In this document: positions 23,292 to 60,688 of the stretch, one piece after another
Position numbering within the stretch: position 1 is the stretch's first letter
Layout of the letters: the number at the start of each line of letters is the position of its first letter
Origin: Guillardia theta CCMP2712
Lineage: Eukaryota > Protista > Cryptophyta
Assembly: GCF_000315625.1 (NCBI RefSeq)
Contig: NW_005434606.1
Coordinates: 1 to 64,000, forward strand
Length of the DNA stretch: 64,000 bases
Reading direction: 5' to 3'
The notes under the pieces: model-generated
What the model was told of the DNA's origin: nothing
What the model saw: only the letters and a program-made list of their open reading frames with translations
The model's database searches: none
Program-made: the position numbers and the translations under genes

Positions 23292-24069
23292 TCTGCATCG
23301 ACAACATTAGACAGAAACAAGCAATGACGTGGTGAGAGTGAAGGGACGCGCAAATGGGCAAATACACCAGAAAGACAGTGATTAATACCAAAGAAAATCA
23401 ATGAAATCAGTTTGGATGAGGATGAAGTTGAGGTCATTATCTGAAGCTATTAGGATACATCTTTTGCGTGAACTTAACCTTTGTACACTCCTTCTCAGAT
23501 CTCCATCACATTTGTACAAGCTCTTGCCTCCGTTCAAATTCGAATTGAGCAGTTTTCTATGTCCTCTCTCTTGCTCTACTCCCTGTCCCTCCATCTTCAC
23601 TCCTCTCTTCCCTTCCTCTTGCCCAGTGCCAACTGGTGGATCATCCCCGACCGCCGCAACAATCTTTTTAAAACTCACCATCAATAACATTATTAAATGG
23701 CATTTGGCTGATAATTGAATTGATAATAATGAACAATATTTTAAACTTGCTAAGAACTGAAATTATTCTGATTATCTTATGGTACCATGTAATTTACTCA
23801 TCGAAGGGGGGCGGCAGATCCGGTTACAGGAACATCGACACTGCTGTACTCAATAGCCGCCAACCACCAGCCGGACAGGCTCAATACGGCCCCCGGGCCC
23901 GGGCCCGGCCCGGCTCGCCCGGCTAATCGGATATTCGGAAGGGTTGCCTCCCGGCCTGGCCGTGCCGATTCCAGTCAGTCTGGTCTAGCCGGCTCTATCA
24001 GTGATAATGGCAAGCGGATGCGGTCCTATCTGTGACTCTTACCCTGGGGCCATCTGCCACTGGCCTGAG

Positions 24070-24868
24070 NNNNNNNNNNNNNNNNNNNNNNNNNNNNNNN
24101 NNNNNNNNNNNNNNNNNNNNNNNNNNNNNNNNNNNNNNNNNNNNNNNNNNNNNNNNNNNNNNNNNNNNNNNNNNNNNNNNNNNNNNNNNNNNNNNNNNNN
24201 NNNNNNNNNNNNNNNNNNNNNNNNNNNNNNNNNNNNNNNNNNNNNNNNNNNNNNNNNNNNNNNNNNNNNNNNNNNNNNNNNNNNNNNNNNNNNNNNNNNN
24301 NNNNNNNNNNNNNNNNNNNNNNNNNNNNNNNNNNNNNNNNNNNNNNNNNNNNNNNNNNNNNNNNNNNNNNNNNNNNNNNNNNNNNNNNNNNNNNNNNNNN
24401 NNNNNNNNNNNNNNNNNNNNNNNNNNNNNNNNNNNNNNNNNNNNNNNNNNNNNNNNNNNNNNNNNNNNNNNNNNNNNNNNNNNNNNNNNNNNNNNNNNNN
24501 NNNNNNNNNNNNNNNNNNNNNNNNNNNNNNNNNNNNNNNNNNNNNNNNNNNNNNNNNNNNNNNNNNNNNNNNNNNNNNNNNNNNNNAGGCACGAGGGGAT
24601 GACCAGGCGGAAGGTACGAGGAGATGACAAGGAGGAAGGCACTAGCTATGGTGATGACACAGACTCGGGCCTGGGGAGGGTACGAGGGGAAAAGGGGGTG
24701 GTGGTGATGTGGGAAGANNNNNNNNNNNNNNNNNNNNNNNNNNNNNNNNNNNNNNNNNNNNNNNNNNNNNNNNNNNNNNNNNNNNNNNNNNNNNNNNNNN
24801 NNNNNNNNNNNNNNNNNNNNNNNNNNNNNNNNNNNNNNNNNNNNNNNNNNNNNNNNNNNNNNNNNNNN
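24070..24868. other. Assembly gaps (N runs ~24070-24586 and ~24718-24868)
   Basis: N characters. Confidence 0.99.
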
Positions 24869-25056
24869 CCATCATGTGACACCGGGGTACTGGATAGTAC
24901 CGGTATTTTTGATACCAAGTCCTGGTTATGAAGGGGGTAGCCGCTGTGGGCTTCGAGGGGTGGGTCATGGGGAGGGGTCCGAACGGAGGGTTTAAAGGGG
25001 GGTGGAGGGGTGGGGTAAAGTTCCAAAATGGAGAGTTGAAAGTTTGAAAGTTGATT

Positions 25057-25244
25057 TTGATTGGAAAATGATTGCAAAAGTATACGGTTACGACCGTTTC
25101 TGATACGTGTAACGGTACGAAACGGGGAGTTTTGATTGGAAAATGATTATTGTTTCAAAAAGTTGATTGGAAAATGATTACTGCAAACTTTCGTTGATTG
25201 GAAAATGATTACTCCAAAAATTTGTTGATTGGAAATTGATGATT
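25057..25244. repeat. Five copies of TTGATTGGAAAATGATT (last copy diverged); four at exact 31-bp period
   Basis: Copies start at 25057, 25132, 25163, 25194 and 25225, with non-identical spacers. Each contains ATTGG (reverse CCAAT). Confidence 0.9.
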
Positions 25245-27149
25245 GCCCCATAAGCATAGAGAAAAGTGAAAACGTCGGAACTTGGGAACGGTCGTGGCGA
25301 CCGTGCGGCGTCTAAAACTCGACTCGACTCTGCTGCTGTATTTGTATGAACTTGCCAGTTCTTGATTGAGAGTACCGCCACCGTATATTAATGCTTTTAG
25401 ATTCTCTACTGATGTACCAGCCGCACTCAATAGATTTTATAGTTTATCTTTTTATTGAATATTTAGGATGGCTCCGACCAGCTGGTGCGGGGTGGGGTGG
25501 GTGATAGCTTATGGGTGGGGTGGGGGGGCCATACGTTCTTTTTTTCAGGGTATATAGGGGTACAAAAGAGAGGGAAATGGTGGGTGGGAAGCATGGACTC
25601 CAAAGCTGGATACTACTAGAGAAATCACACCACTACCCCTTAGCAAGCTCACCCCACCTTCGTTCTCAATTGTATGCGACCCTCGAACCAGAAGTTGGAG
25701 ATACCCCACCCATTCCTGCAGCTTCTGAGACACTACCCTCTTTCAGATGCCTCCTTTTTTCATGCACCCTTCCATTTCCCCACTTACAACCCACCTCTTT
25801 TAGGTGAAATGGACATCATGGCTCACAGGTACCCAGCAATTGAAGAGATGTATGCGAGACTACCCCTACATGGGGGCCAGACATTAGAGAAACTTTATCC
25901 GTGTGATCCACATTACTATAAAATACCACCCTACCAAGAGGCTTTTCTGTGAACACCTACCCCTTTCATCAATCCACCCACCCTCTTCAAACGAAATAAG
26001 TGTACCCCTACCCACCAGTTGTATTTCACTTTCAGCCTATGACCGCTGATGCACAAGCCTTGACTTTTCTTCAGAAATCAAGGCCGATATTATGCTGTAC
26101 CCTATGGGCTGTCCACCCCTCAACCACGGAGCCAACACGGAGCCAACATGCACCCCCATATATTCATCCTCATGCATGACCCGGTGGGTATCATCGCCAC
26201 CCCCCCCAACATTTTCACGATGAGTAGAACACCACGGGTTCTCGATCTGCGAAAAACATAGGGGGTGGGTAGGTCATTGATAGTGACCCGGTGGTGGCTC
26301 CTACCCCTCAATTTGGATGCTTCACATGAATCTATAGGGAAGGGGGTCACAATAGAGATTTTATTTATCCATACCATAGAGAGATCTTGTGCGAGTGCTA
26401 ACCCTACCCCACTGTTTCAAACTGTACCCCACCCTATTCTCTGACATATCTCTTACACCTACCCCGACCTCTGTACCCTACTATCCCAGACTTGGTCCCC
26501 CCCTCTAAAACTGGCCTCTACTACTTCCCAAACATTCCCAGTCACCCATACTACCCTACCCTGCCTCGAAAACAATGACCACCCAAAGAGGAGGAGAAAA
26601 TGTTAGCACCCATCCACAGACTCACCCCTACCACTTTCTTTCAAGACTTTTCGCGGGAAAATTATAGGGTCCAACAATAACCCCGCCATTGATTCTAATC
26701 ACCCTACCCTGGTGTCGGAACAAAAGGTTCTCTTCTACCCCCATGTTTTATCATCCTGCACCCCCTCAGAAATGTTACTCCACCCGAGTTTTCGAGGCCT
26801 TCACCACCCGTCCCAAAAACCACCCTCACGACTCAAACACCATCCTTTCATCGCCCACCCCACCACACAATTTCCCTGGTGTACCACCACTGCTACCCAC
26901 CCTCTCCATCCTTCTCCACCCCCTAGTCCTCGTCCTGGTCTCCCTGCCCCCTGCCCGCTCCCCCCACTCCTCGGTCCTCCCCCTCCTCCCTTGTCTACTC
27001 CCCGCCCACTCTTCCTCCCTCCCTCCCTCCCTCTTGTTCTTGTCTCCATCTCACCTCCCGTGATCTCCTTCTATTCAGTTGGGGTGGTTCTCGATGGGAT
27101 TCTCGATGTGTAATCAGACATAGGATTGGTGAGAAAGTGGGCTGAAAAT

Positions 27150-30509: not shown

Positions 30510-32328
30510 ACTCGGCTCGCTCCTCGACAAACTCGGCCTCCGAATGACAACTGCGGCTCAAAATGCGTCACTATGTTTTTTGAACAGGGTCGTGAATGTT
30601 TCCCCGCCCGCCTGGTGTGTCAGCTTGAGCGTGTGTGGCATATTCGTTCAACAATTTGTTCTAATTATGTGTGTCGTGGAAACGATGATTAGCTCCCCAG
30701 TTTCTATGTGATTATGGTTAAACTTGAAGCATACAAGGATGGTCTGAGTCGGTGCAGTGCTGTTACTCAGTACTTTGGATTCGGAAGTTCCGGGCCGCCG
30801 CCCTGACTGGTTCGAAGCCGTTGGGTTACTCGGTGGCAGTGTTAGTGATCTTTCGGTTCGCCGCCGGTCCGGCGGGCCAAACCGCATTCGACCGGCGGCG
30901 TGAAGCCTCAGAACGGTTACATTGATTATCGGATTAAATAACGGTGCATCGATGTTTGACCTTTCAATCGCAGGAACGGACGCATCTGTCCGACTACCCC
31001 TAGCAAGCGGCATTCGGCCATGGGACCGTAGGTGGTTCCACAAGGGTACTCGCCGTCAGTGCCTCGGGAAGGGAGTCGAGGGCAGGAGTGGGGCTGAATG
31101 CAGTAGTTTTGGGTGGGGTGGGGTGGGGTAGGACAGATTGGGGTGGGTAGGGTAGGGTAGGGTAGGGTAGGGTGGGGCGGACTGATGTGGTGTGGGGTCG
31201 GATTCTCCGAAAAAACAATTTTTGGGCCGCATGGAGAAAAGTTAACTTTCAACATATAGATACCCTGAAAGTTAATCTAGTCCTTGAAAGTGAATACGTC
31301 TTGAAACTTTTGGTAAAACGATTTTAGAGAAGTGTGCCTAACGGTCGCAACGCTTTGTAACGACCAACGGTAACGCAAACTTACAAACCATCCCTACCCC
31401 CCTTTTAAGTACAAGAGAAAAGAACCGACCCCTCAACTTAGGACTACCCTTGATTATCCTCTTTGTCTGACTGAAAGTGGCCTTTTACTACCCCTCCAAT
31501 TCCACGACTTGGCTATAGAGGGATCGGGGGATCAGGTACCCACCCCAGAGATGTGCGTTGGTATTTTTCAAAGTTCACACATACCCCACCCATCCTATAG
31601 AAAAAGTAACCCCACCACCATTATCCGGTCAAAGCACCGGTTCATTTGTACGGTGTGGGATGACCCCCACCCCCAAACACCTTCTTAAAGCAAACTCCGT
31701 TCGTTTTCTCAAAGTGGGACGTTGGAAGCACGTAGATGGTCATGAGGGAGGGAAGGGAAACAAGGAGATGGAGAGTGTTGGAAGACAAGGATAGCAAGGA
31801 TTGCGATAGCAGACAAGAAGACCGAAACAATTAACCACAGAAAGAGAAATAAACACAGACAACGTCATCAGCAGAAAGTCTCTCCTGTAGTAGTCAGACG
31901 ATCAGACCTAGGGACAACAATGCAAGAAGACATGTTGCAGAGAAGACAGTGTCCAAAGAAATCGAAAAAAATATCAGAGGAGGAAGAAGTTTGCGGTAAT
32001 GGTCAAGTAATAGAATGTATCAAAACCAGCTCGTGGCAGAGGGAAGTCAAGAAGGGATAAGCAGCGTGCACTGTCTTGGGCAAAGATGACTTAGAGGTGA
32101 CAAAAAAAAGTACAAAGCAATCGACAATGATAGAGAGTTGTGCTACTGAGAGTGATTAGCAGAGAAACTTGCTCATGTTTGAAAAAGATAAACAGTGTGA
32201 GCATTTTCTGATTGTTGTCCGCAGAGTCGCTTCGCGCATTAGCAACTTGGTGCAGGATCTGAATGAGAATGCAATTCTAAGTGGACACAAAACCTCAAGA
32301 ATCAAGAAAACTTGTTTCGTCATCGAAA

Positions 32329-33894
32329 ATGTACTCCGATGACATGTTTGCTCTTGCTCCCAAACCAGCAAGTTCTTCGAAACGAAACAGATCAGGAAAC
32401 GAAGTCGCTACCACCTTGCAGGGAGGGTCGTCGAGCATTGACATATCATGCTCAAATCACGAATCGAAGATGTTGAGTTCCTTCCATGTCATGCTCAAGG
32501 AGAATTTCCTGTGCGACATGAAGGTCACGATAGGAAGAGCCAAGGTCCCTGCGCACTCCATCGTGCTTGCTAGCTGCAGCTGCTTCTTCAAGAACAAGAT
32601 CGCCAAGGGGTCGCGAACCGTCAGCCTCGACCCCAACGACCTCAGCGTGCAGGACTTCAGAACCCTTCTTGACTGCATCTACAAGGGCAAGATGTCTCTC
32701 ATGGAGGAAGCGATCCCCAAGTTCATCCAGATCACCGAGAAGCTCGAGCTCGAGAACATCCGGGCCGCGTGCGTCATGAAGCTCGTATCCCGGATCAACG
32801 AGGGCAACATGGAGCGGATGCTTGTCACCGGCAACGACATCAAGTGTAAGGAGATCATCGACGCTGCCAAAGCTGCCATGCTCAAGGCGAAGTCAGCTCA
32901 GGTCAGCGAGCAGGCCTCGAGCGTGTCCAAGAGCATCAAGTGCCCATGGACGAAGGAGGAGGATGACCGTGTGGCCGACCTTGTCGCTCGTTTCGGCGTC
33001 AAGTCATGGTCCGCACTCGCCACCTACATGCCTGGGAGGACGGGGAAGCAGATCAGAGAGCGATGGCACAACCACCTGGACCCCAACGTGAGGAAGGAGC
33101 GCTGGACACCTCAGGAGGACGCAGCGATCATAGAGGCACATGCGCATCTGGACAACAAGTGGGCGGAGATTGCCAAGCTGTTGCCGGGAAGGACGGACAA
33201 CGCAATCAAAAACAGGTGGAACTCAACGCTGAGGAGGGTGGTGGAGCATGGCGCTGTCATCAGCTACGACTCTGAGAGCCGGCAGAGCGACGAGCTGGAC
33301 AACAGCTCAGACACTGCGAACAAGAAGCGGAAAGTTTTGACACACCAGGAGCAGTCGAAAGGCAACGAGGACAAGCCAGTTGGAGAAGGAGCGAGGACGC
33401 GGGAAGGGACGGATCGACGAGCTGAAGAGGAGCTGGGGCGTAGCTGCTTCGATGTCGACGAGATGTCGGAAGAGACGGAGGAGGATGTGAACTTCACTCA
33501 TGATCTGCACGAAGAGGAGCTCGGGAGGAACGAGGCTGACGTACTGCAGTTCGAGGAGGAGGAGGAGTCCAAGAGAGCAGCTACCTCTAAGCTGTGGACG
33601 CGAAGACCGCCCATCAGCATCCAGACAGAACGAGAGGAGCTGGCGACCTGGCCATCCAACTTTTCTCCCTCCGTTGCCCTTGAAGAACTTTTCTGCCTCT
33701 CCTCCAACGTGACATGCGTCGGTGGAGGGACAACCTCGCCTGGACTGGGGGTTTGTGACGTTTTCTCCTCCCTCGGGGCTAGCAAGGGCGACAAACCCCT
33801 GGAGAGCCTCGAGGAGGATGGGGACAGACAGGGCAGGGAAGTCTCTGCTCCCTCCTCATCGGTAGCTTCGCCCCCCAAAACCCTCAAAGTTTGA
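32329..33894 (+). CDS. BTB/POZ + R2R3-MYB transcription factor
   Basis: BTB: [27 protein letters not shown]...[14 protein letters not shown] repeats: [10 protein letters not shown]...[17 protein letters not shown] and [10 protein letters not shown]...[23 protein letters not shown]. Confidence 0.92.
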
Positions 33895-48247: not shown

Positions 48248-51200
48248 CTAGTTCTGTAGGTTCTGCAAGGCCTCCATGACGAGGGAGCGGAACTTGCCGT
48301 CCTTGACGTTCACCTTGCTCACGTCGTCCTTGCTGATAGTCTCCAGTGCTGCTCCCAGCAGCCTCATGGCGTTGTTGTAGTTCCTGTCAGTCACCCCCAC
48401 GAACTCCATGTCGACGTCTCCTCCTCGGGTGAGGATCGCCATCTGCAGCTGCAGGTCGATCTCTCCGTCTGTGCACAGGATGCCGCCCGCAAGCCTGGGA
48501 TGCAGCATGGAGCTGCTGCTCTCGGGGAGGATCCTCCACACCCCCAGCTCGGCGTCGTTGTTGCCGAAGAGCAGCTGCCTGTGCTTGCTCCACAAGTCCG
48601 TGATCTGCGACGCTGTCCCCTTCCCCTTGGCGACAGCCCAGAGGGCGGGGAGAGGTTCTTCCCAGAGGTCGTAGCAGTCCTCCGAGTAGAGAGCGACGTG
48701 CAGTAGCACGTCGTTGAACGACAGCCTCGGGTCCTCCTCGTCCGAGCAGCTGAGCAACTGGGCAAACATTCCCCCCCAGAGCCGGGAGATCCGCTCGATG
48801 GGCTCATCCGCTAGGATCATCTTCCTGCTGAGAGACACGAGCGTCTGGATGAGAAACACAGTCTTCTCCTCTGCGTTGTCGCTCATCTTGCACGAGATCA
48901 TGTCCTGCATGTGCGTCGACGCCCAGATCAGACAGTCGACCAGCGTGCTCTCAGTCTCTGTCGGCCTGTCGCTGCTGCCGCCGTCGGGTTGACCCATCGC
49001 CCTCAACAGCGCTTGCGGAGAGTCGAGCGAGTTGTCGTAGAGTATCGTCATCCACAGAGCTGTGCGGTAGGGGCTCAGGTACTTGTCCTCCTCGGCGTTC
49101 TCCATGCCGATCTGATACTTGAGAATGTCCTTGGCAATGGCGAGGCTGTCGGAGGGAGAAGACTTCTTGAGCAGCGAGCACAGGTTGTCGTTCTTGAGTG
49201 CCGAAAGCACCTTGGCAGGGGAGGTGCAGACGGAGAGCAGCTCCACCAGCAGCGAGCTGTCTTGCACGGGCTCCGTGTTCCAGCACTTGTTCTGCACGTC
49301 GTTCCAGTCCACCGAGTGTCCGTGCTTGACGGCATCGATGATGTCTTCGAGCCTGGAGTAGTCGCCCCCCCAGGAGAAGGCGATGCCCTCGGCAAGCTCG
49401 TTGTTGCACTCCACCTCCAGCTGCAGCGGGAACCCGCACTGATCCACGAGCTTGTTCTCGAACATGACCTGCGGATCGTCCATCTTGCTGCATCGCTCGA
49501 CCCCGCCTGATGCGGGGTCCTTCCTCGCCTGCGCACGCATGTGGCAGCACCAAGCCGCGATTCTCAGAGCAGGAGGAGCGTCGTAGGCGCGATCGAGGCC
49601 GAAGGAGACGAAGTCAGGGAAGTCCATCCCGAGGTTGTCGGCGTTCTCAGTGAGGAGAGCCGCTTGAAACATGGAGGCCACCATCCCCTTGAGGCTCCGA
49701 GTGATGGAGAGGATCGGGTCCTCCCCCCTCTTCGCTCCCTCCATGGCCGCCAGGAACGCCTCGGCGAACTGCTGTGCGGTAATGGTGGACACTGTGGGAA
49801 CCTTGTTCAGCAGGAACCCAGCAAGCTTCTCAGCTGAGATGGACGAGGTCTGCGACAAGATGTCCTCGAGCTCGGCGATCCCTCGAAGGGACACGGCCTC
49901 GCCCCCAAAGATGCACCGGGCGCAGTGCATCCACTTGCGGATCCCTGAGCCGTTGCGGGTCTTCTTGGCGTCCATCACCTCGCTCAGCAGGGTGTTTCCG
50001 AGACGCGTCACGATGTCGACCACGCGCTCGGGCTCGATGCCGATCTTGGTTCCATCCTCCTTGAGCTGTTTCAGGTGCTCCAGGTCTCGGGAGTCCTTCC
50101 GGTTGGCAATCAGCAGCACGTGGAGCCTTCGCACGTTGAGCCGCAGCCACTGGAAGAGCTGAACCTTGTGGACGTCCTTGAGCATGTGGAACTCGTCGAC
50201 TATGAGAAAGAGGTGAGCCGAGGAGTCCGCGATCTCGCACTCGAGGATCTCCGTCAGGGCCATGTCGACAAGCCGATCGTCACTACCATCTATGAAGGCC
50301 TTGGACATCTGATGCCTTCCCTTGAGCTCCTCTGCGATCTGGTTGGAGAAGAAACTCTTTCCTGCTCCAGGGGGAGAGCAGAGGAGGACGAGGCAGGGCT
50401 TGGCTTCCAGCATGATGTCTTTCAGCGACGTCCTGTAGTCGGCAAAGTCTTTCTCGCTCTTACTGCCCCCTTCCCCTCCGAAGAACTCCGACACAAACCT
50501 CTCGGTCTTCTCCCAGCTGCTGTAGAAAGGCTTGCCATTGACAGCCTCGAACTTGGCGATGGACTCTTTCATCCTCGGGTAGGGCTGAATGTGTGTGGGG
50601 CGCAGTCGGACAACGTGCTCTGACTGCAAGTCTGCCTCATTCCGGATGCTCCTCTCAATAGGAGCAGGAGCAAACTCATACACGCACCGATCTCTGTTCT
50701 CCGAGAAGTTCCAGCTTGTCTGCGTGTTCTCTAGGTACACGAACCGCCACGGGTGTATCCGAGTGTACTCCGCCAACCATTTCAGCAGCGCGTCCTCGAT
50801 GCTGTCAAGCCCGGTCACGTACACCAGCCAAGTGTAGGCCGAGAAGTGACCGATGATGGTCAGGTACATGCTCGCGTTGTCCTTCGATCGAGTCAGCGCG
50901 TCATATCCCAGATCGCAAACTTCAACGATGGCCCCGTGCTTCTTCAGCTCTCCCAACGTGCCCCCACGAACGATGTGCACGCCGTACAGGTCGTTCTTGC
51001 GCTTGCAGAACGGCAGGAAGTGAGGAGGAACATGGAAGGACCTCTGGAAGAGCGAGAGGCAGTGGTTGGGGGAGGGCAGCGAGATCGCCACACAGTGGGC
51101 GATGACGAGCAGGTTCAAGTCTCCTCCTATGCTGCCGGAAGAGCTGTCTTCGATGCACAGCGACGGGACCCTCGCGGTCGTTGGGCCCTTTTCGAGCTGG

Positions 51201-54200
51201 TTAAGGAACCAAGACTTGGCGTCTTCTGGCAGGGGTGACCGGACAAGATTGCAGAGCCAGCTGAGCAGGTCACTGCGGTGAGAGAGCAGGTCGTAGATGT
51301 GCTCTGATATGTCCGTGTCTCCCGAGATGTTCGACTTCTTGGTCTTGACCTTGAGATAATGTTCCAACGACTTGACTAGGAGGCTCTTGTGGAACACGTA
51401 GACTATCGGCAGCCCGTCGCGCTCGTTGTACTTGATTTTGAGCCTCTTGACGTCGATCTGAACTTGATACAAGGGAACCTTCTCCCCTGAGAGAGACATG
51501 ACGGCAAACTTGGAGCAAACTCTGTTCCCGTAGCCCCAGGTGGCTGGGAACAAGGAGTTCTGAGCTGTTCCGGAGTTGCTCTCAGGGTTATCTGTCGGCA
51601 GGTCATGCACATCGTCTATGTAAGTGACTTTCTCCTCTTGTCCTTGGCCGAGGTTTCTCTCCTTCTTCGCCGAGTCGATGAGACGCTTGGTGTTGTCATC
51701 GGTCTTCTTCGTGTAGACCTTCTCCTGCTGCTTCTCCTCCCCTTCCGAGTCAGAGTCTTCGAAGTGCTGAGTCCAGACCGACTGCGCGTTCAGCCGCTTC
51801 CGTCTGGTGATGGAGGTCAGAAACTCCACCGACTGCTCCATGAACTTCTGCTGGGTGATGTGCTCGTGCGCCGTGATCAGGTTGTTCAGCACCGCGTTGG
51901 CATTCCGCGTCCCATCGTTATCGAACCGAACAAGGTACGGCTCGTCGTTGTTGGCTTCGAAGCTGATTCTCAGCTCTCCATCCACCTCTTCGTTGATTTC
52001 CAACTCGTCTCCTCCATTCGCATCGTCCAACCTTGCCAGGAAGCTGCTCTGATTATGCTCCGCCAACTTCAAGGTGAACACCATCTGTGACCTTGGCACC
52101 CAGTCTCTGATCCCGACGATGAGCGACAGGTTGTTGGACATGGCCTCTCCCAGGTGAGTCAGGCACTGGCTCTCGACATTCAGATCCTGCTCCAAACTCG
52201 GCAGATCCAGGTACTCCAGCACCGTGTTCAGCCCGTTGTCATCCTCCTTGATCTCATCCATGATCCTCAGGATGGCTTCGCAGACGATGTTCTCGGACCG
52301 GATGTAATCGCAAAACAAGTTCTCTTCCTCCCCCTGCTCGTCGCTAATACGCCTGAGCTCATTCAGCACCTGATCGATCTCCTTCAATTCATCTGCATCC
52401 CAGCCACGAGCTTTCTGCGCAGCAAAGTACGACATCTGGACGATTGATTTGATCGTTTCAAGAACAGCAGCGTCGAAGTCGAGCACTGCTAGCTTGCAGA
52501 CGTCTAGCAAGGTGTAGAGGAAGACAGGAGGGTTCTTTGCGCTATCCAGAGATGCTGCTCCCAACAAGACCATCCAGTCTCCTTCCAAGTTCTTGCGCAG
52601 GTAGAACCCCTTGGCTGTGATAGTCGACAACCTCGGGAGGTTGTTGAGATGCTCCCAGGCTCCCCCGTTGTGGGAGAAGATGGCTTCTATCTCAGCGAGC
52701 TGCCCCAGCTCTGCCTCGTCGAAGCTCTTCTGCTGTCGTCGCCGCAAGTTGGTCTGCTGCGACAGAGGAATCTTTCGTGAGTCTCCGGGGCTTCGCAAGA
52801 CCGGGTTCAGTCCTGGCACGATATGGACGATGCCGTAGCCGTCCTTGATGTTGAGGCTCACCAGCTTGCGGGCTGAGATCGTTCGCTCCGCCTGATTCAT
52901 GTCCCTTCGCAGCTTGCCGGTCACTCGCGAGCTCTTGGACTGCTGGGGACGGAGACGATCGGAGGAGAAGGCGGTCTTGAAGAGCGTCAACGTCTTTCGC
53001 TCGACAAGAACTTGAGGGCTCTGCCTGTCATGATCGCGAACATGATCGAAGTTGGCGAACCTCTTGTTCTCCACGTTCTTTGCCCTCCTTCGCGCCATGC
53101 TGCCTCGATCTGCAGTCTCAACCGCAGGCGCAGAGGAGGTGTGGAACTCGAAGCCCTCCTTGAAGATAATATCCTCATAGATCTTCAACTCTCTGCCAGC
53201 ATTTAAGATATCCTCTATCTTTTGCGGCAGCAAGGTTTGAGCCGGGCATCTCACGTAATGCTTGTGTTTGTGATTCCTTCTCTTCTTGCTGCCCACAAGA
53301 TCCAACAGTCTTTGAGACAGCTGCTTGTAGTCATACTTCGCATACAGGTTCGTTGCGATGTACTCAATCTCGTTCAGAACTGACGAGCTGTAGACAATGT
53401 TTTGTCTTTGCCACTCACGAAGCATACACACAACCTCAAACCCCTCGTTCACTGGGGTGATCCCAATCAGCGTGTACAGCGTGTCTGCTACAGTGACCTG
53501 CAGCTTGTCGGAACATCTTTTCAGACCCGAGCACAAGCCTTGGACGCAACTTTGAATGATTGCCTCGCCGTCACATGATCGCAGCTGTGAGAAGAAATCT
53601 GCGATGGTCACCATGTCTTCGACGACTCTGCTTTGCATCTGAGCCTCATTCGTAGTGAAGTCCCTCTGAGCAATCGCAGGATTCCTACTGGTCTCCTTGA
53701 GGTTGGTTGCCACGTCAGCAAACTTTGCTTCCAAGGCTGATCCATCAATCTGCCATGTACTAGTCAAGTCACATTGAGCTGCGAGCACATACACACCGCT
53801 TCCAGGAAGGTCCCATGCCCACATTCCGCCAGCCTCTTGAGCTTGTCCACCTGCAACGAGGTCCCGAAGGCAAGCGTGTTGACTTGAAGGCCGTACTGCG
53901 AGTATTTAGAGTAGAGAAGCTGCAAACCTTGTTAGAGGTCAACGCGTAGAGAACACAAAATTTGACCTGCATCTCCCGCTCTCCGTTCTCATGCGAGTCG
54001 CCATCGGACATGAACAAAATGACTGGAGGAAGCTGAGAGTTGTCCGTCTGCGACAAAATGCGGTCGACCTCGCTCAGAGCAGGTCCGAATGAAGTGCCCC
54101 CTCCTTTGAGAACAAGGTAAGCGTCCAACTTCGCTAGCGCATCGTCTAGAGTGATATTCTTGCACAGAGTCCTGGCAGATGAGTTGAAGGCAACCATAGA

Positions 54201-57200
54201 GATCATGTCTTTTGCGCTTGCAGTCTTACGAATATTGAAGAAAGTTCGAACTGCAGCTACGAGACTTGCCCAACCTGACCCTGCCATGGAGCCAGAGTCG
54301 TCCAGCACGAAGATGACGTGGAAGTTTGCGGGGTCGTCTTTGTACTCAGCGGAGAAATCCACTTGTGAATACTTCTGCTCAAGCTTATGAGCTATGCTCT
54401 CCATGACCTCCTCCATCAACTTGAGCGGAAAGTTCTGGTCGTATGTCTCCCCGTCTCTGATCTTCTTCGTGTGCTGCAGGTATCGGGTGATGGGGCCCAT
54501 GTCTCTCACATCGAACTGCAGCAGAAGGGTCAACAGCCACTGGATCGTCAAGCTCTCGCTGTCGGAGTTGCCTTGGAACAGCGGAATGTTGTCTTTGCCG
54601 CTCCGGAAGCGAACATCCATGTACACTGGAAGAGGACAGTAGACCATCTCGGTAGTGAACTTGGGCTGGCTCCATATCTTTCGCATCTTGAGGAGGTTGT
54701 TGTTGAGAGTTTGCTTCAGCCTACTCCCACTCATCTTCCCGAGGTCTTCAAGAGACATGCCTGCAGCATAGAACCAAGCCAAGCCCGTCAGGAAGATCTG
54801 CGCTCTCTGCTCCTGAATCTTGGTCTCGTCGATGGAGTTGAGGGTGTCGTCGATATGCAAGAGGATGTTGAGGTTGTGCAGCACAAGCTCTGGGGTGACG
54901 CCCTTGTCTGTGATAGGAAACATACGCCTGAACTTCTCCTTCTCCTGGAATTGAAGTCCAGGGAACTGAGAGTTCTCCATAGACTTGATGAGGAAGTCTA
55001 CACAGCTCCTCGGAAGGTGGCGGGAGTGACACCTAAAACTGTACACGGGCCATCCTGCTTTCTGAGCCTGACCGACCACGTAGTTCTCGTTCTCGATGAG
55101 GTTCTTCGTGCCAATCACGTTGCGCTTGATCGCGTTGAACATGCTGGCTGGCAGCGTGTGAGGAGCAAGAGTGAACCTGGCAAGATTGCTCAGCCCCTGC
55201 AGCGACGAGAAGGAAGGGTCAGCTGCTCGAGCGACTTTCTTGAAGAGCATCCAGCTTCCTGGCTGCGGGCTGTGACGCAGCTGCAGGGACCGGGCAGGAC
55301 AGGCCCACCAGCAGAACCAAAGGAGGGCAAGGAAGGACTCGTTGCTCTCCTCTGGTGTAGCGTTCATGACGGTAAACATAGTGCTCCTGGAGAGCTCGTT
55401 GTGCAGCAGCTCGACGTGTTTCAGCAGGTCAGCCTCCTCGAACGTCTTGTTCTTGAAATGCATGATGTAAACCGTGCAGAGCTTCTTGGAGCTTTCAAAC
55501 GGCAGGTCGAACTTGTGGGACAGTGCCATCTGCATCAGGTCCCTGGCACACTCGTTATCGGCAAAGGTCTTGTAGATGAGGGACCAAGGCTCAGGAATCA
55601 GGTCAGAAGGGAAAAGCACTGGCGGTTCGAATCCATGTTCGGACAAAACTTCAATCATCTCTACAGCAAGAGCTCGAGTCTGCTGCGTGCACAACCCGTT
55701 CAAGAACTCTGCATAGAAATCGAAGGCCTTCTCCTCTCCATGCGCTGCCTTGATGGCTTCGAGACTTGGCACGAGGATCCCATCCCTGAAGAGGGTGAGC
55801 TTGTACGGAGGATTAGCCGACTTGACAAGGTGAAGGAGAGCCTTGGGCCTCACCCGAGCTGCGATCGACGTGGAAGTATTGACCATGTCCACCATTGCAA
55901 CTGAGTCTGCGTCCTTAGCCCATTCCAGCCACCCGCCAAGAATATTCTTCATCACCGACCCATATGTCTCTTGGAGTATCTTGGTCAAGTTTTCTTTGGA
56001 CAGGCAAACGCTCATCAGAGCTCTACCGATCCTGAGGCTCGGGTCCGACAGCATCTTGCTGATCTCAACTTTGTTCTTCTCAGACATGATGAAGTCTCTG
56101 ATCGCATGCTGCTCGCTCAATGTCTCCACCTTATCCAGCGCGATCATCGCCCTTGCGACCGAGAGGTACAATTGAAGCTTCTCACCGCTCGTTACTTGAT
56201 CATCGGAGCCCTTGGTCTCAAAGAAGATGCCGTTCTTCAGCAGCAGAATCTGGTCCTCCTCGAAGTAGTCGTTGGTCAACACGGCAGTGGACCCAGAAAC
56301 CAGTAGCAGCCACCAGATAGCTGCCGTTCGAGATCTCAGCACGTAGAACTTGTCAGTCGGCAAGCTGTGGAGCAGTCCCTGGCAAGCAGAGTAATCCCTC
56401 TCGATCTCCTGGATCCCATCCTTGCCCAGCGTCAGGTTCACGATCTGGGAAGGGCTCAAACTCAGCAGCAGCATGATTCGGCTGGGCGAGTGCGTGCAGA
56501 TATGCTTGAAGACTTCGCTGGTGAGCTCAGGGCCTGTCTGCCACTTGACAAACATCTCCTCCCAGTTCAGCTCCGCTCCCACGATGGACTGATGCTCCAT
56601 AATCTCCTGGTGTCGGATGATGGCGTCGCCCTTCCCGGGGTCGAGGTACATGGGGTACTTGGAGCGGTTATCATGGAGGTGTGACTGATGGTAAGACAAT
56701 TCAGCGCACAAGAGCCTGCCGGGGTTGTTGGCACAGTGAACATTGGCGTCCCCCAGGTTGGCCGTTTGAATCAGGGGGAGGCCGAAAGGGAGGTTCTTCT
56801 CCCTGTGAACTAGAGAGCTGCCTTCGTCTGTGTTCTGACAAAGAAAATGGATGTACGCCTCAATGCGATGCAGCTGGCTCAAGAACCGAACGCAAGGTTG
56901 ACGACAGAAGTCCGCAAAGCAGATCAATGGCATCTCATCAGTCCAACTTTCAGATGTGCATCGGATGTAATGGTTGACATGCCGTGCAAGGAGGCCAGCA
57001 AGAGTTTTGCATTCCTCTTCCAGCACTTTGCAAGGTACCATGATGGGCTGATCTGCCTTGGACAGATTGCTGAAGATCTCCTCCAGGACATGCTTGTTCT
57101 CAACTCTCAGCAAGTCGTCATTCTGGTCAAGAAAGTTCAGTAGATTGAGATTCTGCATCCCTCCTCTCATGAACTCTTCAATAAATCCTTTCTGGGTATC

Positions 57201-60200
57201 AGTAATGATGTGATCTAAGGAGAACATCAACTTGAGACCTCTGCAGATCAACCCGTACTTGTCAATATTCTTCTCCGGGTAGATATTATTCCTTTGAGTC
57301 AGTATGGGAGCATGAATCCATGTAGGTGGCGAACGACTGTCCTGATAGATTCTGAATCTGCAGAGGCTGACAAGCGGGCATGTAACCAGCAGAACGATCT
57401 TGACGTTCGACTTGAAGCACCGAGATATCAAGACTTCGAGCTTTCTCTGTGGGAGGAACGAAGCTCTTGAAAGGATAATCGTTGGGCACTTGATCGAGCT
57501 GTTCACATTCTTCTGGCGATTCTTCTCCTCGGCCCGAGCGCCTGTGATACGAAGCTCTGAGTTCTCAGACAAGAACTCCTTCAGGTTGTCAAAGTTAGAT
57601 CTGTCTCCGGCATCGATCAGTCGTATTTTGACAGCCTCATACGCCGATTCATAAATAGTATTAGCAGTCCAGCTGTGATCCGAGCACACTAGAATGCGAA
57701 TGAAACTTTCCATCTTGTCCGCCTGAGAGACAGGCTGGTCCATCCACTCCCTCACAGTCTGTAGCCACCTCCCGCACTCCATGGCGTACTTGAGAGGAGT
57801 CTCTTTGCACCAATACGAACGGCAGAGCTCTTGAGGAGTTTTACAGAGTCGATCGTAGGTTTCATTCAGTACGGAGCCGACAGCAGATTGCCTTGAGAAT
57901 GAAATGGGCAGGAATTTCTGGTCAATAGATTCTCTGATGCTATCGGGACGATAGATGAGGTCTTTAAATGACGGACTGAATTCCAACAGCTTGAGTATGC
58001 TGTTCGAGTGCCGGAAGATCATCTTGAAGGCAGGAGCTGGTAACGTAATGAGCTGATTCATCTGGTCTGCCGTGATCTTCCCAGTGATGTTCACATACAG
58101 GAACGTGATGGAAGTTGGGTTCGCTTGCTTGAGCTTCAAGAAGAGAGACTCGAAATTGCTTTCCTCCACAAAGACTTCTTCTTGTGCAAAGTGAGTTTCC
58201 TTAGAAATGATTGTGGGCAAGTAGGTCAGGTGATCTTCAGAGACGATTGCGATCCTCTTGTTGAGATTTGCCCTCATGCCAACGAAATGCACGGATCTGT
58301 CTGCATCGGAAGCCTCAGGGCTCACGACATTGAAGTTGTCATTTTCAAAGCTGTTGGAAGACCCCGCGGTGATCAGATTCAACACAATCCTTCTGCTCTC
58401 TTGCTCAGTCACACTCAGTCTGTTCAGATTCTCGAAGGCCCCCTTCATCTTCGATTCCCAAAACTTAGTAACCAAGTTTGCAAGATCCGGGTGGACAGCG
58501 TGTAGCAGCTGGACACTGGCATAGTACAAAACCAGCGCGTTGTTCTCAATCTCCTTCATGATCAAGTTTGAATAATCATCTTGAGTCATGTTTTGTCGAT
58601 CGATGGCATTCAATCCAAGCACCTCTGAAGCACAACAGTCAGAAAATCGACATCATTCACAAACAAACTTCAATCACAACATGAACATCAGGACGTTTTG
58701 ATTCAACAACTTCGAGCTAGAATATCAATACCTGCGATTACTTCTGCACTCTCCATGAACCCTTGACCTCGCGGTGCTGTCGCGGTCAATCGGCCAGTTC
58801 CAGTCTGGTACACGGCACTCGGGGGCATCAGCACAGCTAGACGGTAGAAGGGGAGGACTTCGGTTGATTCACCAACCTGACAAACTGAGGCGATCGGCTC
58901 CACGGCCAAGGCACTGTACCCAACACCCTCAGTCTTGACGTTGCCAACCTCGCGCAGGTCTATCAGAAATCGGCTTCCTGCATCTGAGATGTCTTGAAAA
59001 TGGGACCCGCCTTCCGATCTCTTGTCGTTGAGGACAAGCAGGATGTGAGTGAACTTTGGAGTCGACGGATTTGTCTGCGACAAGATCTCTTCGACCGTCT
59101 TGGCGTTGGGAGAGTGCTTGTCACGGTTGACGAACTGATAGAAACTGATTGAGTCCGATGTTTCTATCCCTAGACCGCAAGTCTTCAAGACATCCACCGT
59201 ATCGTCATGTTCAACACTGAGGTCAAAGTTCAGATAGTTCCCAGACAGGCTCAAGCCTATCTCAAACAAACGAGAGTCCAGCTCTTGCCGAGAGTCATTA
59301 GAGTCTGTCTTCCTGTACAAAGAGACCATCCTGACAACTACCGACTTTTCTTCGGACTCGGGGACTCCCTTTTTCTCATTGTGTGCCATCTTGTACCCAA
59401 ACACAGCAATGCGCCTTCCTTCGCCGTGCATGGTCTTGGCATCCTGCACTTGTTTCTGGGACTCCAAGATTGCTTCCCGCACACACGCCAGACGTCCGGC
59501 TCTCCGAGCATTCTCCCGCAGGTTCACCTTTCGTTCCATGTAAACCTTGATGTAGCTCGTGAGATTCGTCATCATCGACGGTGCACTGAGGTCGTCAAGG
59601 AACTTGAAGATCTGTGGTTCAGGCACTCCTTCAAAGTCCAGCACCGACTTCCACTTATCCCACACTCGCTTCTCCTCATTCACATATCCCTCGATCTGCT
59701 CTAGAGTAGCAGTCTCTTGTCCGCCAGGATGGTCATGGTAAAACCTGTCAAGCTCGGTGTTTTCAAAGTCATAGCGATCAACACTGTCCAGCTTACAAAA
59801 CGGAATCACTCCGACGTCTGCGGCCCGTCGCATGGCACTCTCGAGAGATTGTTGAGCTCGGTAATAGTGTTCCATGCACCGGATGATGAACATCTGAACC
59901 TCGGTGTAAACGTTGTTCAGCTCATCATTCTGAAGGTCCTCCAGTTTCTCAGCACGTTTCAACCATTCCTCGGTCAAGTTTGCATCAAGATCTCCAGGCA
60001 TCTTGTCACGAGTCGTTCCAACGAGACCTCGGAGTATGGCTGCCATTTCAACAGGATGGTAACGCTTTGACCTCACGTGCACTATGGAGAAACCAAACTT
60101 CTCTTCTGTGTGCTTCTCAGTCGACGTGGAGACTCCAGTCAGCTTTTCCAGATGATAGCTCAAAAAATCTCTGTCCCAACGATCTTCTGCACCGTAGAAC

Positions 60201-60688
60201 CTCCTGTACCAATTGCTATCGGAATGAAGAGGCCTCATCGCCTCTAGAAGACTATCCATGTTGCTCTCTTCATTCTCAAGGATTCGAGGTCCCAGGCGTC
60301 GAAACGTCTCGTAGTAGATCGGCTGATTCAGACCAGTCAGCCGCGCTGCCACCAGGACCTTCCGCGCAACGCTGATCTTCACCCTCTCATAGGGAGCGTT
60401 CTGGATCCTAGAGTGCCAGAACTTGAGAGCCTCCCTCCACAGGCACGCTTCCTTGCCTCGTTGCCTCACATTCATCAAGTAGATTGCCTGAGTGTTGGTA
60501 AACCATACTTCATTGAAGCCCGTCTCCGGAGGTCTGTTGCCTTGTGCATTCGAGCTCGGTGCCAGTGCTCTCGGAACAGCTGTGGCTTCATTGTGAAGAG
60601 CGTTTCGGCCCGATTGCGAGTTGATGTCTCCATCAATGTCCTCTGCGTCCGAAAAGGATGCGTCTGACATACCTGCTGTATTCGTCAT
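48248..60688 (-). CDS. Giant (~4,080 aa) vWA + P-loop NTPase (AAA+/STAND-like) protein; 4 exons
   Basis: Exons 60688-58732, 58624-53967, 53919-53797 and 53749-48248 join in frame through GT-AG introns of 107, 47 and 47 nt. vWA MIDAS: VLDDSGSM, GGGTSF, FMSDG. Walker A CSPPGAGKS; Walker B FLIVDEFH. Confidence 0.88.

What the first reader, a model, noticed from the sequence alone, without database searches (positions are those of the whole stretch)
49000..57750. Internal duplication: a dead pseudo-NTPase module and a live NTPase module flank the vWA domain
Aligned by eye, colinear blocks recur at similar spacing in both halves: IRILVCSDHSWTANTIYE (~57690) vs LVLLCSPPGAGKSFFSNQIA (~50380); IILSRASFL..KSNVKIVLLV vs FLIVDEFHML..LNVRRLHVLLI; CRGLKLMFS vs HCARCIFG; CFADFC..RIEAY vs DFPDFV..RIAAW; FGLPL vs CGFPL; GAELNWEEMFVKW vs GHSVDWNDVQNKCW; RTAAIW vs RTALW. 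The first copy lacks the Walker A Lys and Walker B DE. A second degenerate alpha/beta unit may precede each (ITFLYVNITGKI vs WLVYVTGLDSI). Inference: a tandem active/inactive NTPase pair, as in multi-AAA rings or paired sensor/executor NTPases.
Basis: partly seen in the sequence, partly recalled or inferred. Interest (0 to 1): 0.8.

Follow-up and report, generated by a model that had tools for sequence, protein, structure and literature searches.

The report
Duplicated AAA+ module, one copy dead
One giant (~4,080-residue) protist gene carries two ancient copies of a ~760-residue ATPase module; the first has lost every catalytic residue and the second keeps them all, a familiar live/dead ATPase pairing found here in a protein family nobody has described.

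Summary
Confirmed. The finding lies in one minus-strand eukaryotic gene at 48248-60688. It has four exons, three short GT..AG introns and a predicted 4,079 codons. The closest relatives are Hanusia phi transcripts, so the source is probably a cryptophyte.

Pairwise comparison of the two halves shows nothing (BLASTP E 0.38; Smith-Waterman z 1.3). Family profiles match at hhalign probability 96%, E 3.8e-9.

Independent AlphaFold2 models (pLDDT 87.9 and 86.9) share the same order of secondary-structure elements over 685 aligned columns. Both retrieve the same AAA+ ATPases from the PDB.

The live copy keeps Walker A, Walker B (DExH) and sensor ANR in 26 of 26 relatives. None of about 30 dead copies has GK[ST] or an acidic Walker B pair.

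Sequence signal sits mainly in the helical domains. It is weak for the P-loop domain and absent for the preceding alpha/beta unit, which is supported by predicted structure only.

The vWA domain is real with an intact MIDAS motif, but most full-length relatives lack it, so it is an accessory insertion. There are only two copies, so this is not a six-unit ring. Mechanism is inferred.

The parts
48248..60688 (-). Whole predicted gene: four exons, three introns, 12,237 coding nt = 4,079 codons. The start at 60688 is the first ATG of the first long ORF; further upstream exons are not excluded.
   Evidence: ORFs. Splice sites read. Junctions checked against relatives. Full-length single-ORF relatives of 3,638-4,011 aa.
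58732..60688 (-). Exon 1 (ORF C part, 652 codons plus 1 base). N-terminal region with no known domain.
   Evidence: Pfam, NCBIfam and PADLOC give no hit. It is conserved in P0024, P0028, P0030, P0043 and P0045.
58625..58731 (-). Intron 1 (107 nt, GT..AG, phase 1).
   Evidence: Sequence. Hanusia transcript P0026 runs across the junction with exactly one residue between the two exon matches.
53967..58624 (-). Exon 2 (ORF B part). It holds the dead module, a helical middle region and the first two-thirds of the vWA domain.
55944..58292 (-). Dead module (ORF B aa 111-893), the N-terminal copy of the duplicated unit.
   Evidence: Long hhalign alignment: ORF B 111-893 with ORF A 936-1693. AF2 pLDDT 87.9, pTM 0.88. 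The fold search returns AAA+ ATPases.
57900..58253 (-). Dead module, preceding alpha/beta unit (ORF B aa 124-241; contains ITFLYVNITGKI).
   Evidence: AF2 strands at model positions 25-28, 47-53, 74-80, 100-105 and 140-142. All five map onto strands of the live copy. G181 and P226 are conserved in both families. There is no sequence-level significance.
57297..57701 (-). Dead module, P-loop-fold alpha/beta domain without catalytic residues (ORF B aa 308-442).
   Evidence: The five strands equivalent to beta1-beta5 (of the six in this domain of the model) map onto live-copy strands beta1-beta5. The Walker A Lys position holds A/V/E/T/R. The Walker B positions hold S/F/T and R/N. The sensor positions hold A/T/P and E/C. 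No relative has GK[ST].
55944..57260 (-). Dead module, helical domains (ORF B aa 455-893). This is the part with the strongest sequence similarity to the live copy.
   Evidence: hhalign helical-1 E 3e-6 and helical-2 E 4e-5. Shared conserved R586, W687, W694 and A768.
53740..54317 (-). vWA domain with a MIDAS DxSxS motif (DDSGS at ORF B aa 1441). It spans the end of exon 2, the 41-codon exon 3 and the first residues of exon 4, and is interrupted by introns 2 and 3. The lower bound is approximate.
   Evidence: Pfam VWA E 6.4e-11, 43.2 bits against a cut-off of 23.8, aa 1436-1547. DxSxS. Reading of exon 3.
53920..53966 (-). Intron 2 (47 nt, GT..AG, phase 0).
   Evidence: The spacing in P0032 between the flanking matches fits the 41-codon exon.
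53797..53919 (-). Exon 3 (123 nt, 41 codons, no stop). It encodes the C-terminal part of the vWA fold.
53750..53796 (-). Intron 3 (47 nt, GT..AG, phase 0).
   Evidence: The acceptor falls exactly at ORF A codon 26.
48248..53749 (-). Exon 4 (ORF A from codon 26 through the stop codon). It holds a long linker region, the live module and the C-terminal helices.
48746..51019 (-). Live module (ORF A aa 936-1693), the C-terminal copy of the duplicated unit.
   Evidence: hhalign. AF2 pLDDT 86.9, pTM 0.82. Fold search returns RFC1, Avs3, NSF, p97, ORC and SAMD9. The profile matches Cdc6, CTF18 and ORC1 sequences.
50582..50980 (-). Live module, preceding alpha/beta unit (ORF A aa 949-1081; contains WLVYVTGLDSI). 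It has many invariant residues.
   Evidence: AF2 strands. Invariant columns.
50009..50395 (-). Live module, AAA+ alpha/beta domain (ORF A aa 1144-1272).
   Evidence: Pfam AAA PF00004, 22.7 bits against a cut-off of 21.2, aa 1146-1242. AF2 strands beta1-beta5.
50354..50377 (-). Walker A, SPPGAGKS (ORF A aa 1150-1157).
   Evidence: P1152, G1153, G1155, K1156 in 26/26 relatives and S/T at 1157 in 26/26.
50186..50209 (-). Walker B strand and DExH motif (ORF A aa 1206-1213; D1210, E1211, H1213).
   Evidence: D, E and H each 26/26.
50099..50107 (-). Sensor-1 motif A-N-R at the end of beta4 (ORF A aa 1240-1242).
   Evidence: A, N and R each 26/26.
48746..49996 (-). Live module, helical domains with a small three-stranded sheet (ORF A aa 1277-1693).
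   Evidence: AF2. hhalign helical-1 and helical-2 matches.

Best explanation
Shown. The region is one long eukaryotic gene, probably from a cryptophyte. Its roughly 4,080-residue product contains two paralogous copies of a ~760-residue super-module. Each copy has an alpha/beta unit, then a P-loop AAA+-type alpha/beta domain, then helical domains. The duplication is ancient: every full-length relative found has both copies in the same order. These relatives come from dinoflagellates, an unnamed transcriptome and metagenomes.

Shown. The C-terminal copy has an invariant Walker A, a DExH Walker B and an ANR sensor, so it is the nucleotide-hydrolysing unit. Its nearest sequence relatives are the Cdc6/ORC and clamp-loader type of AAA+.

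Shown. The N-terminal copy keeps the strands and helices but has no glycine-rich loop, no lysine, no acidic pair and no sensor residues in any relative. It diverges faster than the live copy but is still clearly conserved.

Inferred. The dead copy is kept as a structural or regulatory partner of the live copy. It could be a pseudo-subunit that packs against the live module or offers a fixed interface, as inactive AAA+ units do next to active ones in ORC, clamp loaders, dynein or RNF213. In that case nucleotide turnover in one site would drive a change in a large asymmetric scaffold.

Inferred. In this gene and a few relatives, a MIDAS-bearing vWA domain inserted between the copies would add a metal-dependent site for binding a partner protein.
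For: One gene: splice junctions are confirmed by relatives, and single-ORF relatives of 3,638-4,011 aa carry both modules.

Duplication:
- Shuffled, reversed and other-region controls score far lower.
- Of 8 aligned columns conserved in both families, 7 hold the same residue.
- The live-copy HMM weakly hits dead modules of P0029 and P0062 in register, i-E 6e-4 to 8e-4.

Same fold:
- Two independent high-confidence AF2 models.
- Q3 0.69-0.72 against 0.42 for shifted registers, and ten of ten equivalent strands matched.
- Both models retrieve p97/Cdc48, NSF/Sec18, RFC1 and SAMD9 from the PDB.

Live versus dead: column shares, no GK[ST] in any dead copy, and 40 near-invariant live-copy columns that are mostly lost in the dead family.

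Selection on the dead copy: 20-39% identity across distant relatives and 55 columns conserved at 85% or more.

AAA+ type: profile hits to Cdc6, CTF18 and ORC1 and Pfam AAA_22/AAA/AAA_30.
Against: - The P-loop domain taken alone gives only weak sequence evidence (E 2.5e-3, z 3.7, and one of 30 shuffles scored higher). The preceding alpha/beta unit gives none. For these parts homology rests on colinearity and on predicted, not solved, structures.
- Foldseek TM-scores are low (0.4 or below), since the queries are multi-domain.
- No evidence was obtained that the two modules touch each other, that the protein oligomerises, or what it acts on.
- The vWA domain is absent from most relatives, so any mechanism centred on it cannot be general.
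Confidence: 0.8

Rival explanations
1. The resemblance is chance or compositional. The two halves would then be unrelated helical-rich regions, and the by-eye blocks a product of selective reading.
For: Pairwise BLASTP and Smith-Waterman comparisons of the two window sequences are not significant. Identity in the final alignment is only 12-13%. There is no DNA-level repeat.
Against: - hhalign E 3.8e-9, probability 96%.
- Block-shuffled controls reach at most 31 against 42 with the shallow profiles. Other regions of the same protein score 13-20 against 87.8.
- Independent AF2 models are colinear element by element.
Confidence: 0.04
2. Only the helical domains (about ORF B 455-775 and ORF A 1280-1596) are duplicated. 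The N-terminal alpha/beta domain would then be an unrelated Rossmann-like domain that happens to sit in the same place, not a decayed NTPase.
For: Sequence significance is concentrated in helical-1 and helical-2. The P-loop domain is marginal and the preceding unit shows nothing. Alpha/beta three-layer domains are common and Foldseek readily cross-matches them.
Against: - The full-length alignment runs through the P-loop domain without a break. It puts beta1, beta3 and beta4 of the dead copy exactly on the Walker A, Walker B and sensor-1 strands.
- The five strands of the dead domain equivalent to beta1-beta5 fall on live-copy strands.
- The fold search with the dead model returns AAA+ ATPases specifically, with probabilities up to 0.99.
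- L390~L1215 after the Walker B strand is conserved in both families.
Confidence: 0.1
3. The two modules belong to two neighbouring genes, not to one polypeptide. The long ORFs would then be separate proteins that act as a pair in trans.
For: The window shows three separate long ORFs with stops between them. No transcript from this organism was available.
Against: - GT..AG introns keep the frame across every junction, giving 4,079 codons in total.
- Hanusia transcripts P0026, P0023 and P0001 span the junctions.
- Relatives encode both modules in single ORFs of 3,638-4,011 aa.
- The vWA domain itself is split across the ORF B / ORF A boundary.
Confidence: 0.03
4. The protein is a SAMD9-like or STAND-type innate-immunity sensor. 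Each module would correspond to the SAMD9 core (an alpha/beta domain, a P-loop NTPase and helical repeats). The dead copy would be the sensor and the live copy the switch.
For: - SAMD9 is the top PDB match of the dead model (E 8e-5, about 970 columns) and ranks 31 for the live model.
- Avs3 is rank 3 for the live model.
- Two family members weakly match Pfam nSTAND_NTPase5.
- The sensor motif A-N-R resembles the STAND 'TTR' motif (own knowledge).
Against: - TM-scores are at most 0.17.
- Profiles give no hit to SAMD9 or STAND sequences in the PDB.
- The best sequence hits are Cdc6/ORC and clamp loaders.
- An invariant Arg just after beta5 is unusual for STAND proteins (own knowledge).
- No effector domain was found.
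Confidence: 0.12

Closest known systems
ORC/Cdc6 and clamp-loader (RFC, CTF18) AAA+ ATPases
   Same: They are the best sequence-profile matches of the live module: Cdc6 E 1e-3, then CTF18, ORC1 and phage clamp loader. RFC1 is the top fold match. Both modules have an AAA+ alpha/beta domain followed by helical domains. These complexes also combine hydrolysing and non-hydrolysing paralogous AAA+ units (own knowledge).
   Different: In ORC and RFC the live and dead units are separate subunits of about 300-900 aa assembled in a ring or spiral. Here there are two copies in one ~4,080-aa chain, about 825 residues apart (about 1,270-1,350 in full-length relatives). Each has an extra alpha/beta unit in front and about 400 residues of helices behind. 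E-values are marginal, so this shows resemblance, not membership.
Giant multi-AAA proteins with mixed active and inactive units (RNF213, midasin/Rea1, dynein, VWA8)
   Same: Each is a very large single chain with paralogous AAA+ units of which only some keep the catalytic motifs. RNF213 is among the fold matches of the dead module. Midasin and VWA8 also combine AAA+ units with a MIDAS/vWA domain (own knowledge).
   Different: Those proteins hold six adjacent AAA units forming one ring. Here only two copies exist, far apart, with no further copy elsewhere in the protein. No Pfam AAA_5 (dynein/midasin-type) match was found. The vWA lies between the copies rather than at the C-terminus, and is missing in most relatives.
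Mg-chelatase ChlD/ChlI and MoxR-vWA pairs
   Same: The logic is a degenerate AAA+ module linked to a MIDAS vWA domain that works with a live AAA+ module (own knowledge). The vWA region weakly matches NCBIfam cobaltochelatase subunit TIGR02442, 25.7 bits against a cut-off of 779.
   Different: No match to Mg_chelatase, AAA_3 or AAA_5 models appeared at the E-value limits used (0.1 for the window's ORFs, 0.01 for 20 family members). Chelatase and MoxR structures are not among the listed top fold hits. The size, the extra domains and the optional vWA all differ.
SAMD9/SAMD9L and bacterial Avs (STAND-like NTPases)
   Same: They give the longest fold alignments (about 970-1,070 columns) to both modules, which may reflect a shared order of alpha/beta domain, P-loop NTPase and helical array.
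   Different: There is no sequence-level support, TM-scores are at most 0.17, and no SAM, AlbA, OB or nuclease effector domains were detected. This is a lead only.
Type II AAA+ (p97/Cdc48, NSF, ClpA) with tandem D1/D2 domains
   Same: Both modules align over about 520-590 columns to these tandem-AAA chains. NSF D2 and Pex1/Pex6 D1 are classic inactive partners of an active domain (own knowledge).
   Different: In the window protein the unit preceding the P-loop domain shows no sequence similarity to the P-loop domain. The Pfam AAA match is only just above its cut-off. No evidence for a hexamer was obtained.

Membership tests
AAA+ superfamily (live module) | Walker A GxxxxGK[ST]-type P-loop after beta1 | tested here: met
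   SPPGAGKS at ORF A aa 1150-1157. P, G, G and K are 26/26 and S/T is 26/26. The first Gly of the canonical motif is Ser.
AAA+ superfamily (live module) | Walker B hhhhDE | tested here: met
   LIVDEFH, with D1210, E1211 and H1213 each 26/26.
AAA+ superfamily (live module) | Sensor-1 polar residue at the end of beta4 | tested here: met
   N1241 is 26/26, within the invariant A-N-R motif, at the end of model strand 385-391.
AAA+ superfamily (live module) | Arginine finger (box VII) and sensor-2 Arg in a C-terminal helical lid | tested here: inconclusive
   Invariant Arg at model positions 425, 454 and 465 (ORF A 1274, 1303, 1314). They lie just after beta5 and in the helices that follow. Their roles cannot be assigned without a superposition or a complex.
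AAA+ superfamily (live module) | Curated family model above its threshold, and fold match | tested here: met
   PF00004 scores 22.7 bits against a cut-off of 21.2 for ORF A, and 27.1 and 25.4 bits for P0030 and P0045. Foldseek hits to RFC1, NSF, p97 and ORC reach probability 1.00. The match is marginal and not specific to one clade.
AAA+ fold, catalytically inactive (dead module) | Same strand and helix order as an AAA+ alpha/beta domain, with fold matches to AAA+ proteins | tested here: met
   The five strands equivalent to beta1-beta5 map onto the live copy's strands. Foldseek hits p97, NVL, RFC1, Cdc48, NSF, ATAD2 and ClpA at E 2e-4 to 1e-3. This rests on a predicted model (pLDDT 87.9).
AAA+ fold, catalytically inactive (dead module) | Absence of nucleotide-binding and hydrolysis residues | tested here: met
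   No GK[ST] in about 30 relatives. K is 2/29 at the Lys column, D is 0/26 and E 2/26 at Walker B, and N is 3/27 and R 0/27 at the sensor. No Pfam or PDB sequence hit.
Six-unit AAA ring proteins (dynein/midasin/RNF213 type) | Six consecutive AAA units in one chain | tested here: not met
   There are only two copies. All other regions of the protein score 13-20 against both module profiles.
MoxR / Mg-chelatase AAA+ with vWA partner | AAA+ domain of the MoxR/chelatase type (Pfam AAA_3, AAA_5, Mg_chelatase) | tested here: not met
   None of these models matched the window ORFs (E up to 0.1) or 20 family members (E up to 0.01).
MoxR / Mg-chelatase AAA+ with vWA partner | vWA domain with a MIDAS motif linked to the ATPase | tested here: met
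   VWA E 6.4e-11 and DDSGS at ORF B 1441. However, it is present in only a minority of relatives.
STAND NTPases (NACHT / NB-ARC / SAMD9-like) | STAND-type NTPase domain recognised by family models; winged-helix and sensor repeats after it; no arginine finger | tested here: inconclusive
   nSTAND_NTPase5 matches in 2 of 20 members, below its cut-off (20.9 against 34 bits). SAMD9 and Avs3 are among the fold hits at low TM. A small three-stranded sheet sits among the helices. There is an invariant Arg after beta5.
von Willebrand factor A domain (PF00092) | Family model above threshold and MIDAS DxSxS | tested here: met
   43.2 bits against a cut-off of 23.8. DxSxS is present. The downstream Thr and Asp of MIDAS were seen by eye (GGGTSF, FMSDGD) but not tested further.

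The most novel reading that the evidence does not exclude
The family may be an undescribed class of giant protist NTPase switches. In this reading an ancient pseudo-ATPase copy and a live Cdc6/STAND-like copy fold back on each other into an intramolecular asymmetric pair. The dead copy senses a ligand and the live copy fires, much like paired sensor/executor immune NTPases or SAMD9. Lineage-specific inserts such as the MIDAS vWA domain would act as exchangeable target-binding heads.
Probability: 0.12. Interest if true: 0.65.

Novelty: new member of a known kind. Interest (0 to 1): 0.42.

Why it matters
Inactive paralogous ATPase units kept beside active ones recur across AAA+ machines such as ORC, clamp loaders, dynein, RNF213 and Pex1/6. 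This result adds a large family with no curated family model, no informative name and no mention in the one literature search made. The family occurs in cryptophytes, dinoflagellates (Symbiodinium, Prorocentrum) and many environmental eukaryotes. The live module alone also matches Amoebophrya and, more distantly, Bodo saltans.

Three practical points follow.
- It gives about 780 residues that have no Pfam match a fold and an origin.
- It shows that the vWA domain, the only confidently annotated feature besides the AAA match, is a late and dispensable insert.
- It defines which residues mark the working site.

It does not overturn anything known, and the function of the protein remains open.

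Tried and rejected
1. Pairwise BLASTP, Smith-Waterman and global alignment of the two halves gave no significant match. Profiles were needed.
2. and one search failed because the coordinates were out of frame. I corrected them.
3. Sequence searches of the PDB with single sequences gave nothing for the dead module and only RFC at E about 0.8 for the live one.
4. The third word search, using an alignment of ORF B relatives, returned only Hanusia fragments.
5. Alignment A3 (an 801-aa query against the whole 3,126-aa P0013) was stretched across the long protein and was discarded. The large search was therefore run with the single window sequence.
6. A third copy was looked for in the N-terminal region, the two middle regions and the C-terminal tail. 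None was found.
7. I tested whether the preceding alpha/beta unit is itself a decayed P-loop domain, which would make each module a D1/D2-like tandem. There is no sequence support.
8. There is no DNA-level repeat between the halves and no Rfam or tRNA feature in the window.
9. PADLOC gave only a weak mad8 match to the P-loop region.
10. One literature search found no description of this family.
11. A direct superposition of the two models could not be done, because model coordinates are not exposed to scripts. I compared secondary-structure elements on the profile alignment instead.
12. The joined, spliced protein was not built or searched. Each exon was searched by reference on its own.

Full report
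**What is at the coordinates.**
The window is eukaryotic. It encodes a myosin motor and a BTB-Myb protein, and it has no tRNA or Rfam feature. The finding lies in three long minus-strand ORFs:
- ORF C, 58703-60688
- ORF B, 53769-58622
- ORF A, 48248-53824

Read directly, they are joined by GT..AG introns that keep the frame. One 107-nt intron separates C from B. Two 47-nt introns flank a 41-codon exon between B and A. The predicted coding sequence is 12,237 nt, or 4,079 codons.

The C/B junction is confirmed by Hanusia phi transcript P0026, where exactly one residue separates the two exon matches. The B/A junction is confirmed by the spacing in P0032. Each exon was searched on its own by reference, and the joined step was left out.

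The closest relatives are Hanusia phi (cryptophyte) transcripts at 67-78% identity. A cryptophyte origin is my inference. Nothing here looked human, viral or toxin-like.

**Known domains.**
- Pfam finds a vWA domain at ORF B aa 1436-1547 (E 6.4e-11). It has a MIDAS DxSxS motif at 1441.
- Pfam finds a marginal AAA match at ORF A aa 1146-1242 (22.7 bits against a cut-off of 21.2).
- Nothing is found for ORF B aa 1-1430 or for ORF C.

**Checking the observation.**
All ten quoted motif pairs exist, with offsets of 820-850 residues. The two window sequences alone are not significantly similar: BLASTP E 0.38, Smith-Waterman z 1.3 and global z 0.1. I therefore built family profiles.

The live module has about 20 relatives by word search. 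They include Symbiodinium P0013, Amoebophrya P0014 and Bodo saltans P0018 and P0021. The dead module had only four relatives by word search. With family scans and word searches leaving it open, I used the large HMMER search on ORF B aa 100-900. It found 43 relatives. Four are full-length proteins (P0030, P0043, P0045, P0065; 3,638-4,011 aa) that carry both modules in the same order.

| Comparison | Score | E-value / probability |
|---|---|---|
| Shallow profiles, dead vs live | 42.0 | E 6e-4 |
| Reversed profiles (control) | 17.6 and 20.8 | - |
| 60 block shuffles (control) | mean 21.3, sd 3.5, max 31.2 | - |
| Deeper profiles (45 vs 26 sequences) | 87.8 | E 3.8e-9, probability 96.0% |
| Five other regions of the protein vs either module | 13-20 (apart from trivial end overlaps) | - |

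The deeper alignment covers 448 columns, pairing ORF B 262-775 with ORF A 1103-1596. The other-region comparisons also show that there is no third copy. FGLPL/CGFPL is not reproduced.

The signal is uneven across sub-domains:

| Sub-domain | E-value | z against shuffles |
|---|---|---|
| Helical-1 | 3e-6 | 5.0 |
| Helical-2 | 4e-5 | 5.5 |
| P-loop domain | 2.5e-3 | 3.7 (one shuffle scored higher) |
| Preceding alpha/beta unit | - | 0.1 |

Of eight aligned columns conserved at 85% or more in both families, seven hold the same residue. Two of these (G181~G1005 and P226~P1053) lie in the preceding unit.

**Predicted folds.**
AlphaFold2 gave confident models from separate alignments: the live module at pLDDT 86.9 and pTM 0.82, and the dead module at pLDDT 87.9 and pTM 0.88. 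I therefore compared the secondary-structure elements at hhalign-aligned columns.

Agreement is 0.69-0.72, against a mean of 0.42 and a maximum of 0.53 for shifted registers. The dead model's five strands in the preceding unit all fall on live-copy strands. So do the five strands of its P-loop-like domain that correspond to beta1-beta5. Two extra short strands in that domain do not. Almost every helix matches a helix.

Both models retrieve the same kinds of PDB entries:
- Live module: RFC1, Avs3, NSF/Sec18, p97, ORC and SAMD9.
- Dead module: SAMD9, p97, RNF213, NVL, RFC1, Cdc48, NSF, ATAD2 and ClpA.

TM-scores are low because the queries are multi-domain.

**Live versus dead.**
In 26 of 26 live copies the following are invariant:
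- the P, G, G and K of SPPGAGK[ST]
- the D, E and H of the Walker B DExH
- the A-N-R at the end of beta4

In the dead family the Lys column holds A/V/E/T/R. The Asp-Glu columns hold S/F/T and R/N. The sensor columns hold A/T/P and E/C. No dead copy in about 30 relatives has GK[ST]. The hydrophobic strand patterns are kept.

The dead copy diverges faster than the live one in the same proteins: 34 vs 52% identity (P0030), 22 vs 35% (P0043) and 22 vs 36% (P0013). It still has 55 strongly conserved columns. It is maintained, not decaying.

**What kind of NTPase.**
The live-module profile matches Cdc6 (E 1e-3), CTF18, ORC1 and clamp-loader sequences in the PDB. Across 20 members, Pfam gives AAA_22 (15), AAA (9), AAA_30 (7) and AAA_16 (4), with stray nSTAND5 and ORC-CDC6-like hits. 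No MoxR, chelatase or dynein-type model matches. I file it as an AAA+ ATPase nearest the initiator/clamp-loader/STAND part of the superfamily, without clade membership.

**The vWA domain is accessory.**
An HMM of the window's vWA segment finds it only in P0024, P0027 and its cluster, and P0032. In Hanusia P0023 and P0001, and in P0030, P0029, P0043, P0045, P0065 and P0013, the flanking regions are contiguous. Pfam sees no vWA in the six of these that were scanned. 'Flanking the vWA' is true for this gene but does not define the family.

**How it most likely works.**
Shown: one chain, two paralogous super-modules, one with a complete catalytic site and one with none, both under selection, and an optional MIDAS vWA between them.

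Inferred: the live module is the nucleotide-driven element. The dead module serves as a fixed structural or regulatory partner, as inactive AAA+ units do in ORC, RFC, dynein and RNF213 (own knowledge). The vWA adds metal-dependent partner binding in some lineages. No contact between the modules, no oligomeric state and no substrate could be tested.

**Rivals.**
- Chance similarity is largely excluded.
- Duplication of the helical part only is possible but disfavoured by the unbroken register and the strand mapping.
- Two separate genes is excluded by transcripts and full-length relatives.
- A SAMD9/STAND-like immune sensor is a lead from fold hits only.

**Novelty and verdict.**
Live/dead AAA+ pairs are well known. 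Here the family carrying the pair has no curated family model and only uninformative database names, and its ~780-residue dead module has no family assignment. Interest is moderate.

Noticed in passing
window 53740-54317; relatives P0023, P0001, P0030, P0029, P0043, P0045, P0065, P0013: The vWA domain varies between present and absent as a whole domain. It is present in the window and three metagenomic lineages at about 38-40% identity. It is absent from the much closer Hanusia phi transcripts and from all other full-length relatives. In the window the segment is bounded on its 3' side by two 47-nt introns, so isoform skipping versus repeated loss or gain cannot be told apart.
   Followed up: partly
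window 50582-50980 (ORF A aa 949-1081): The alpha/beta unit in front of the live P-loop domain has a cluster of invariant charged and aromatic residues (G1005, K1015, W1016, E1019, W1026, E1042, D1045, R1046). They are as conserved as the Walker motifs, and almost all are lost in the dead copy. This suggests a second functional site of unknown nature.
   Followed up: partly
L001 1-5165 (minus strand), next to the homologue at L001 10001-15832: On the metagenomic contig that carries relative P0024, a nearby divergently oriented gene encodes a protein of 3,273 aa or more. It has an RZ-type zinc finger (the type found in RNF213 and ZNFX1) and a faint AAA_22 match. On the same contig the live module is split over three ORFs.
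   Followed up: no
window 7611-9635 (minus) and 32281-33894 (plus): There is a myosin head (motor) ORF (E 1.5e-178). There is also an ORF combining a BTB/POZ domain with two Myb DNA-binding repeats. Both mark the window as eukaryotic nuclear DNA.
   Followed up: no
window 23998-26000: GC content drops sharply to 0.32, against about 0.5 for the neighbouring sequence. ORFs of more than 200 aa are open on both strands over 23998-24931, and small tandem repeats (periods 25 and 31) are present. A (CCCCTT)n run of 10 copies lies at 23170-23231.
   Followed up: no
P0018 (Bodo saltans, 3,091 aa) aa 163-245 and 530-572; P0019 and P0020 aa 155-318: These distant relatives, found through the live module, give weak in-order hits to the dead-module HMM near their N-termini (i-E 3e-3 at best). 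The two-copy architecture may therefore reach kinetoplastids, but this is not significant.
   Followed up: partly
P0065 aa 34-78: One full-length relative has a weak SH3_3 match at its N-terminus (E 5e-4, below the cut-off). This hints that the ends of the family carry lineage-specific add-on domains.
   Followed up: no
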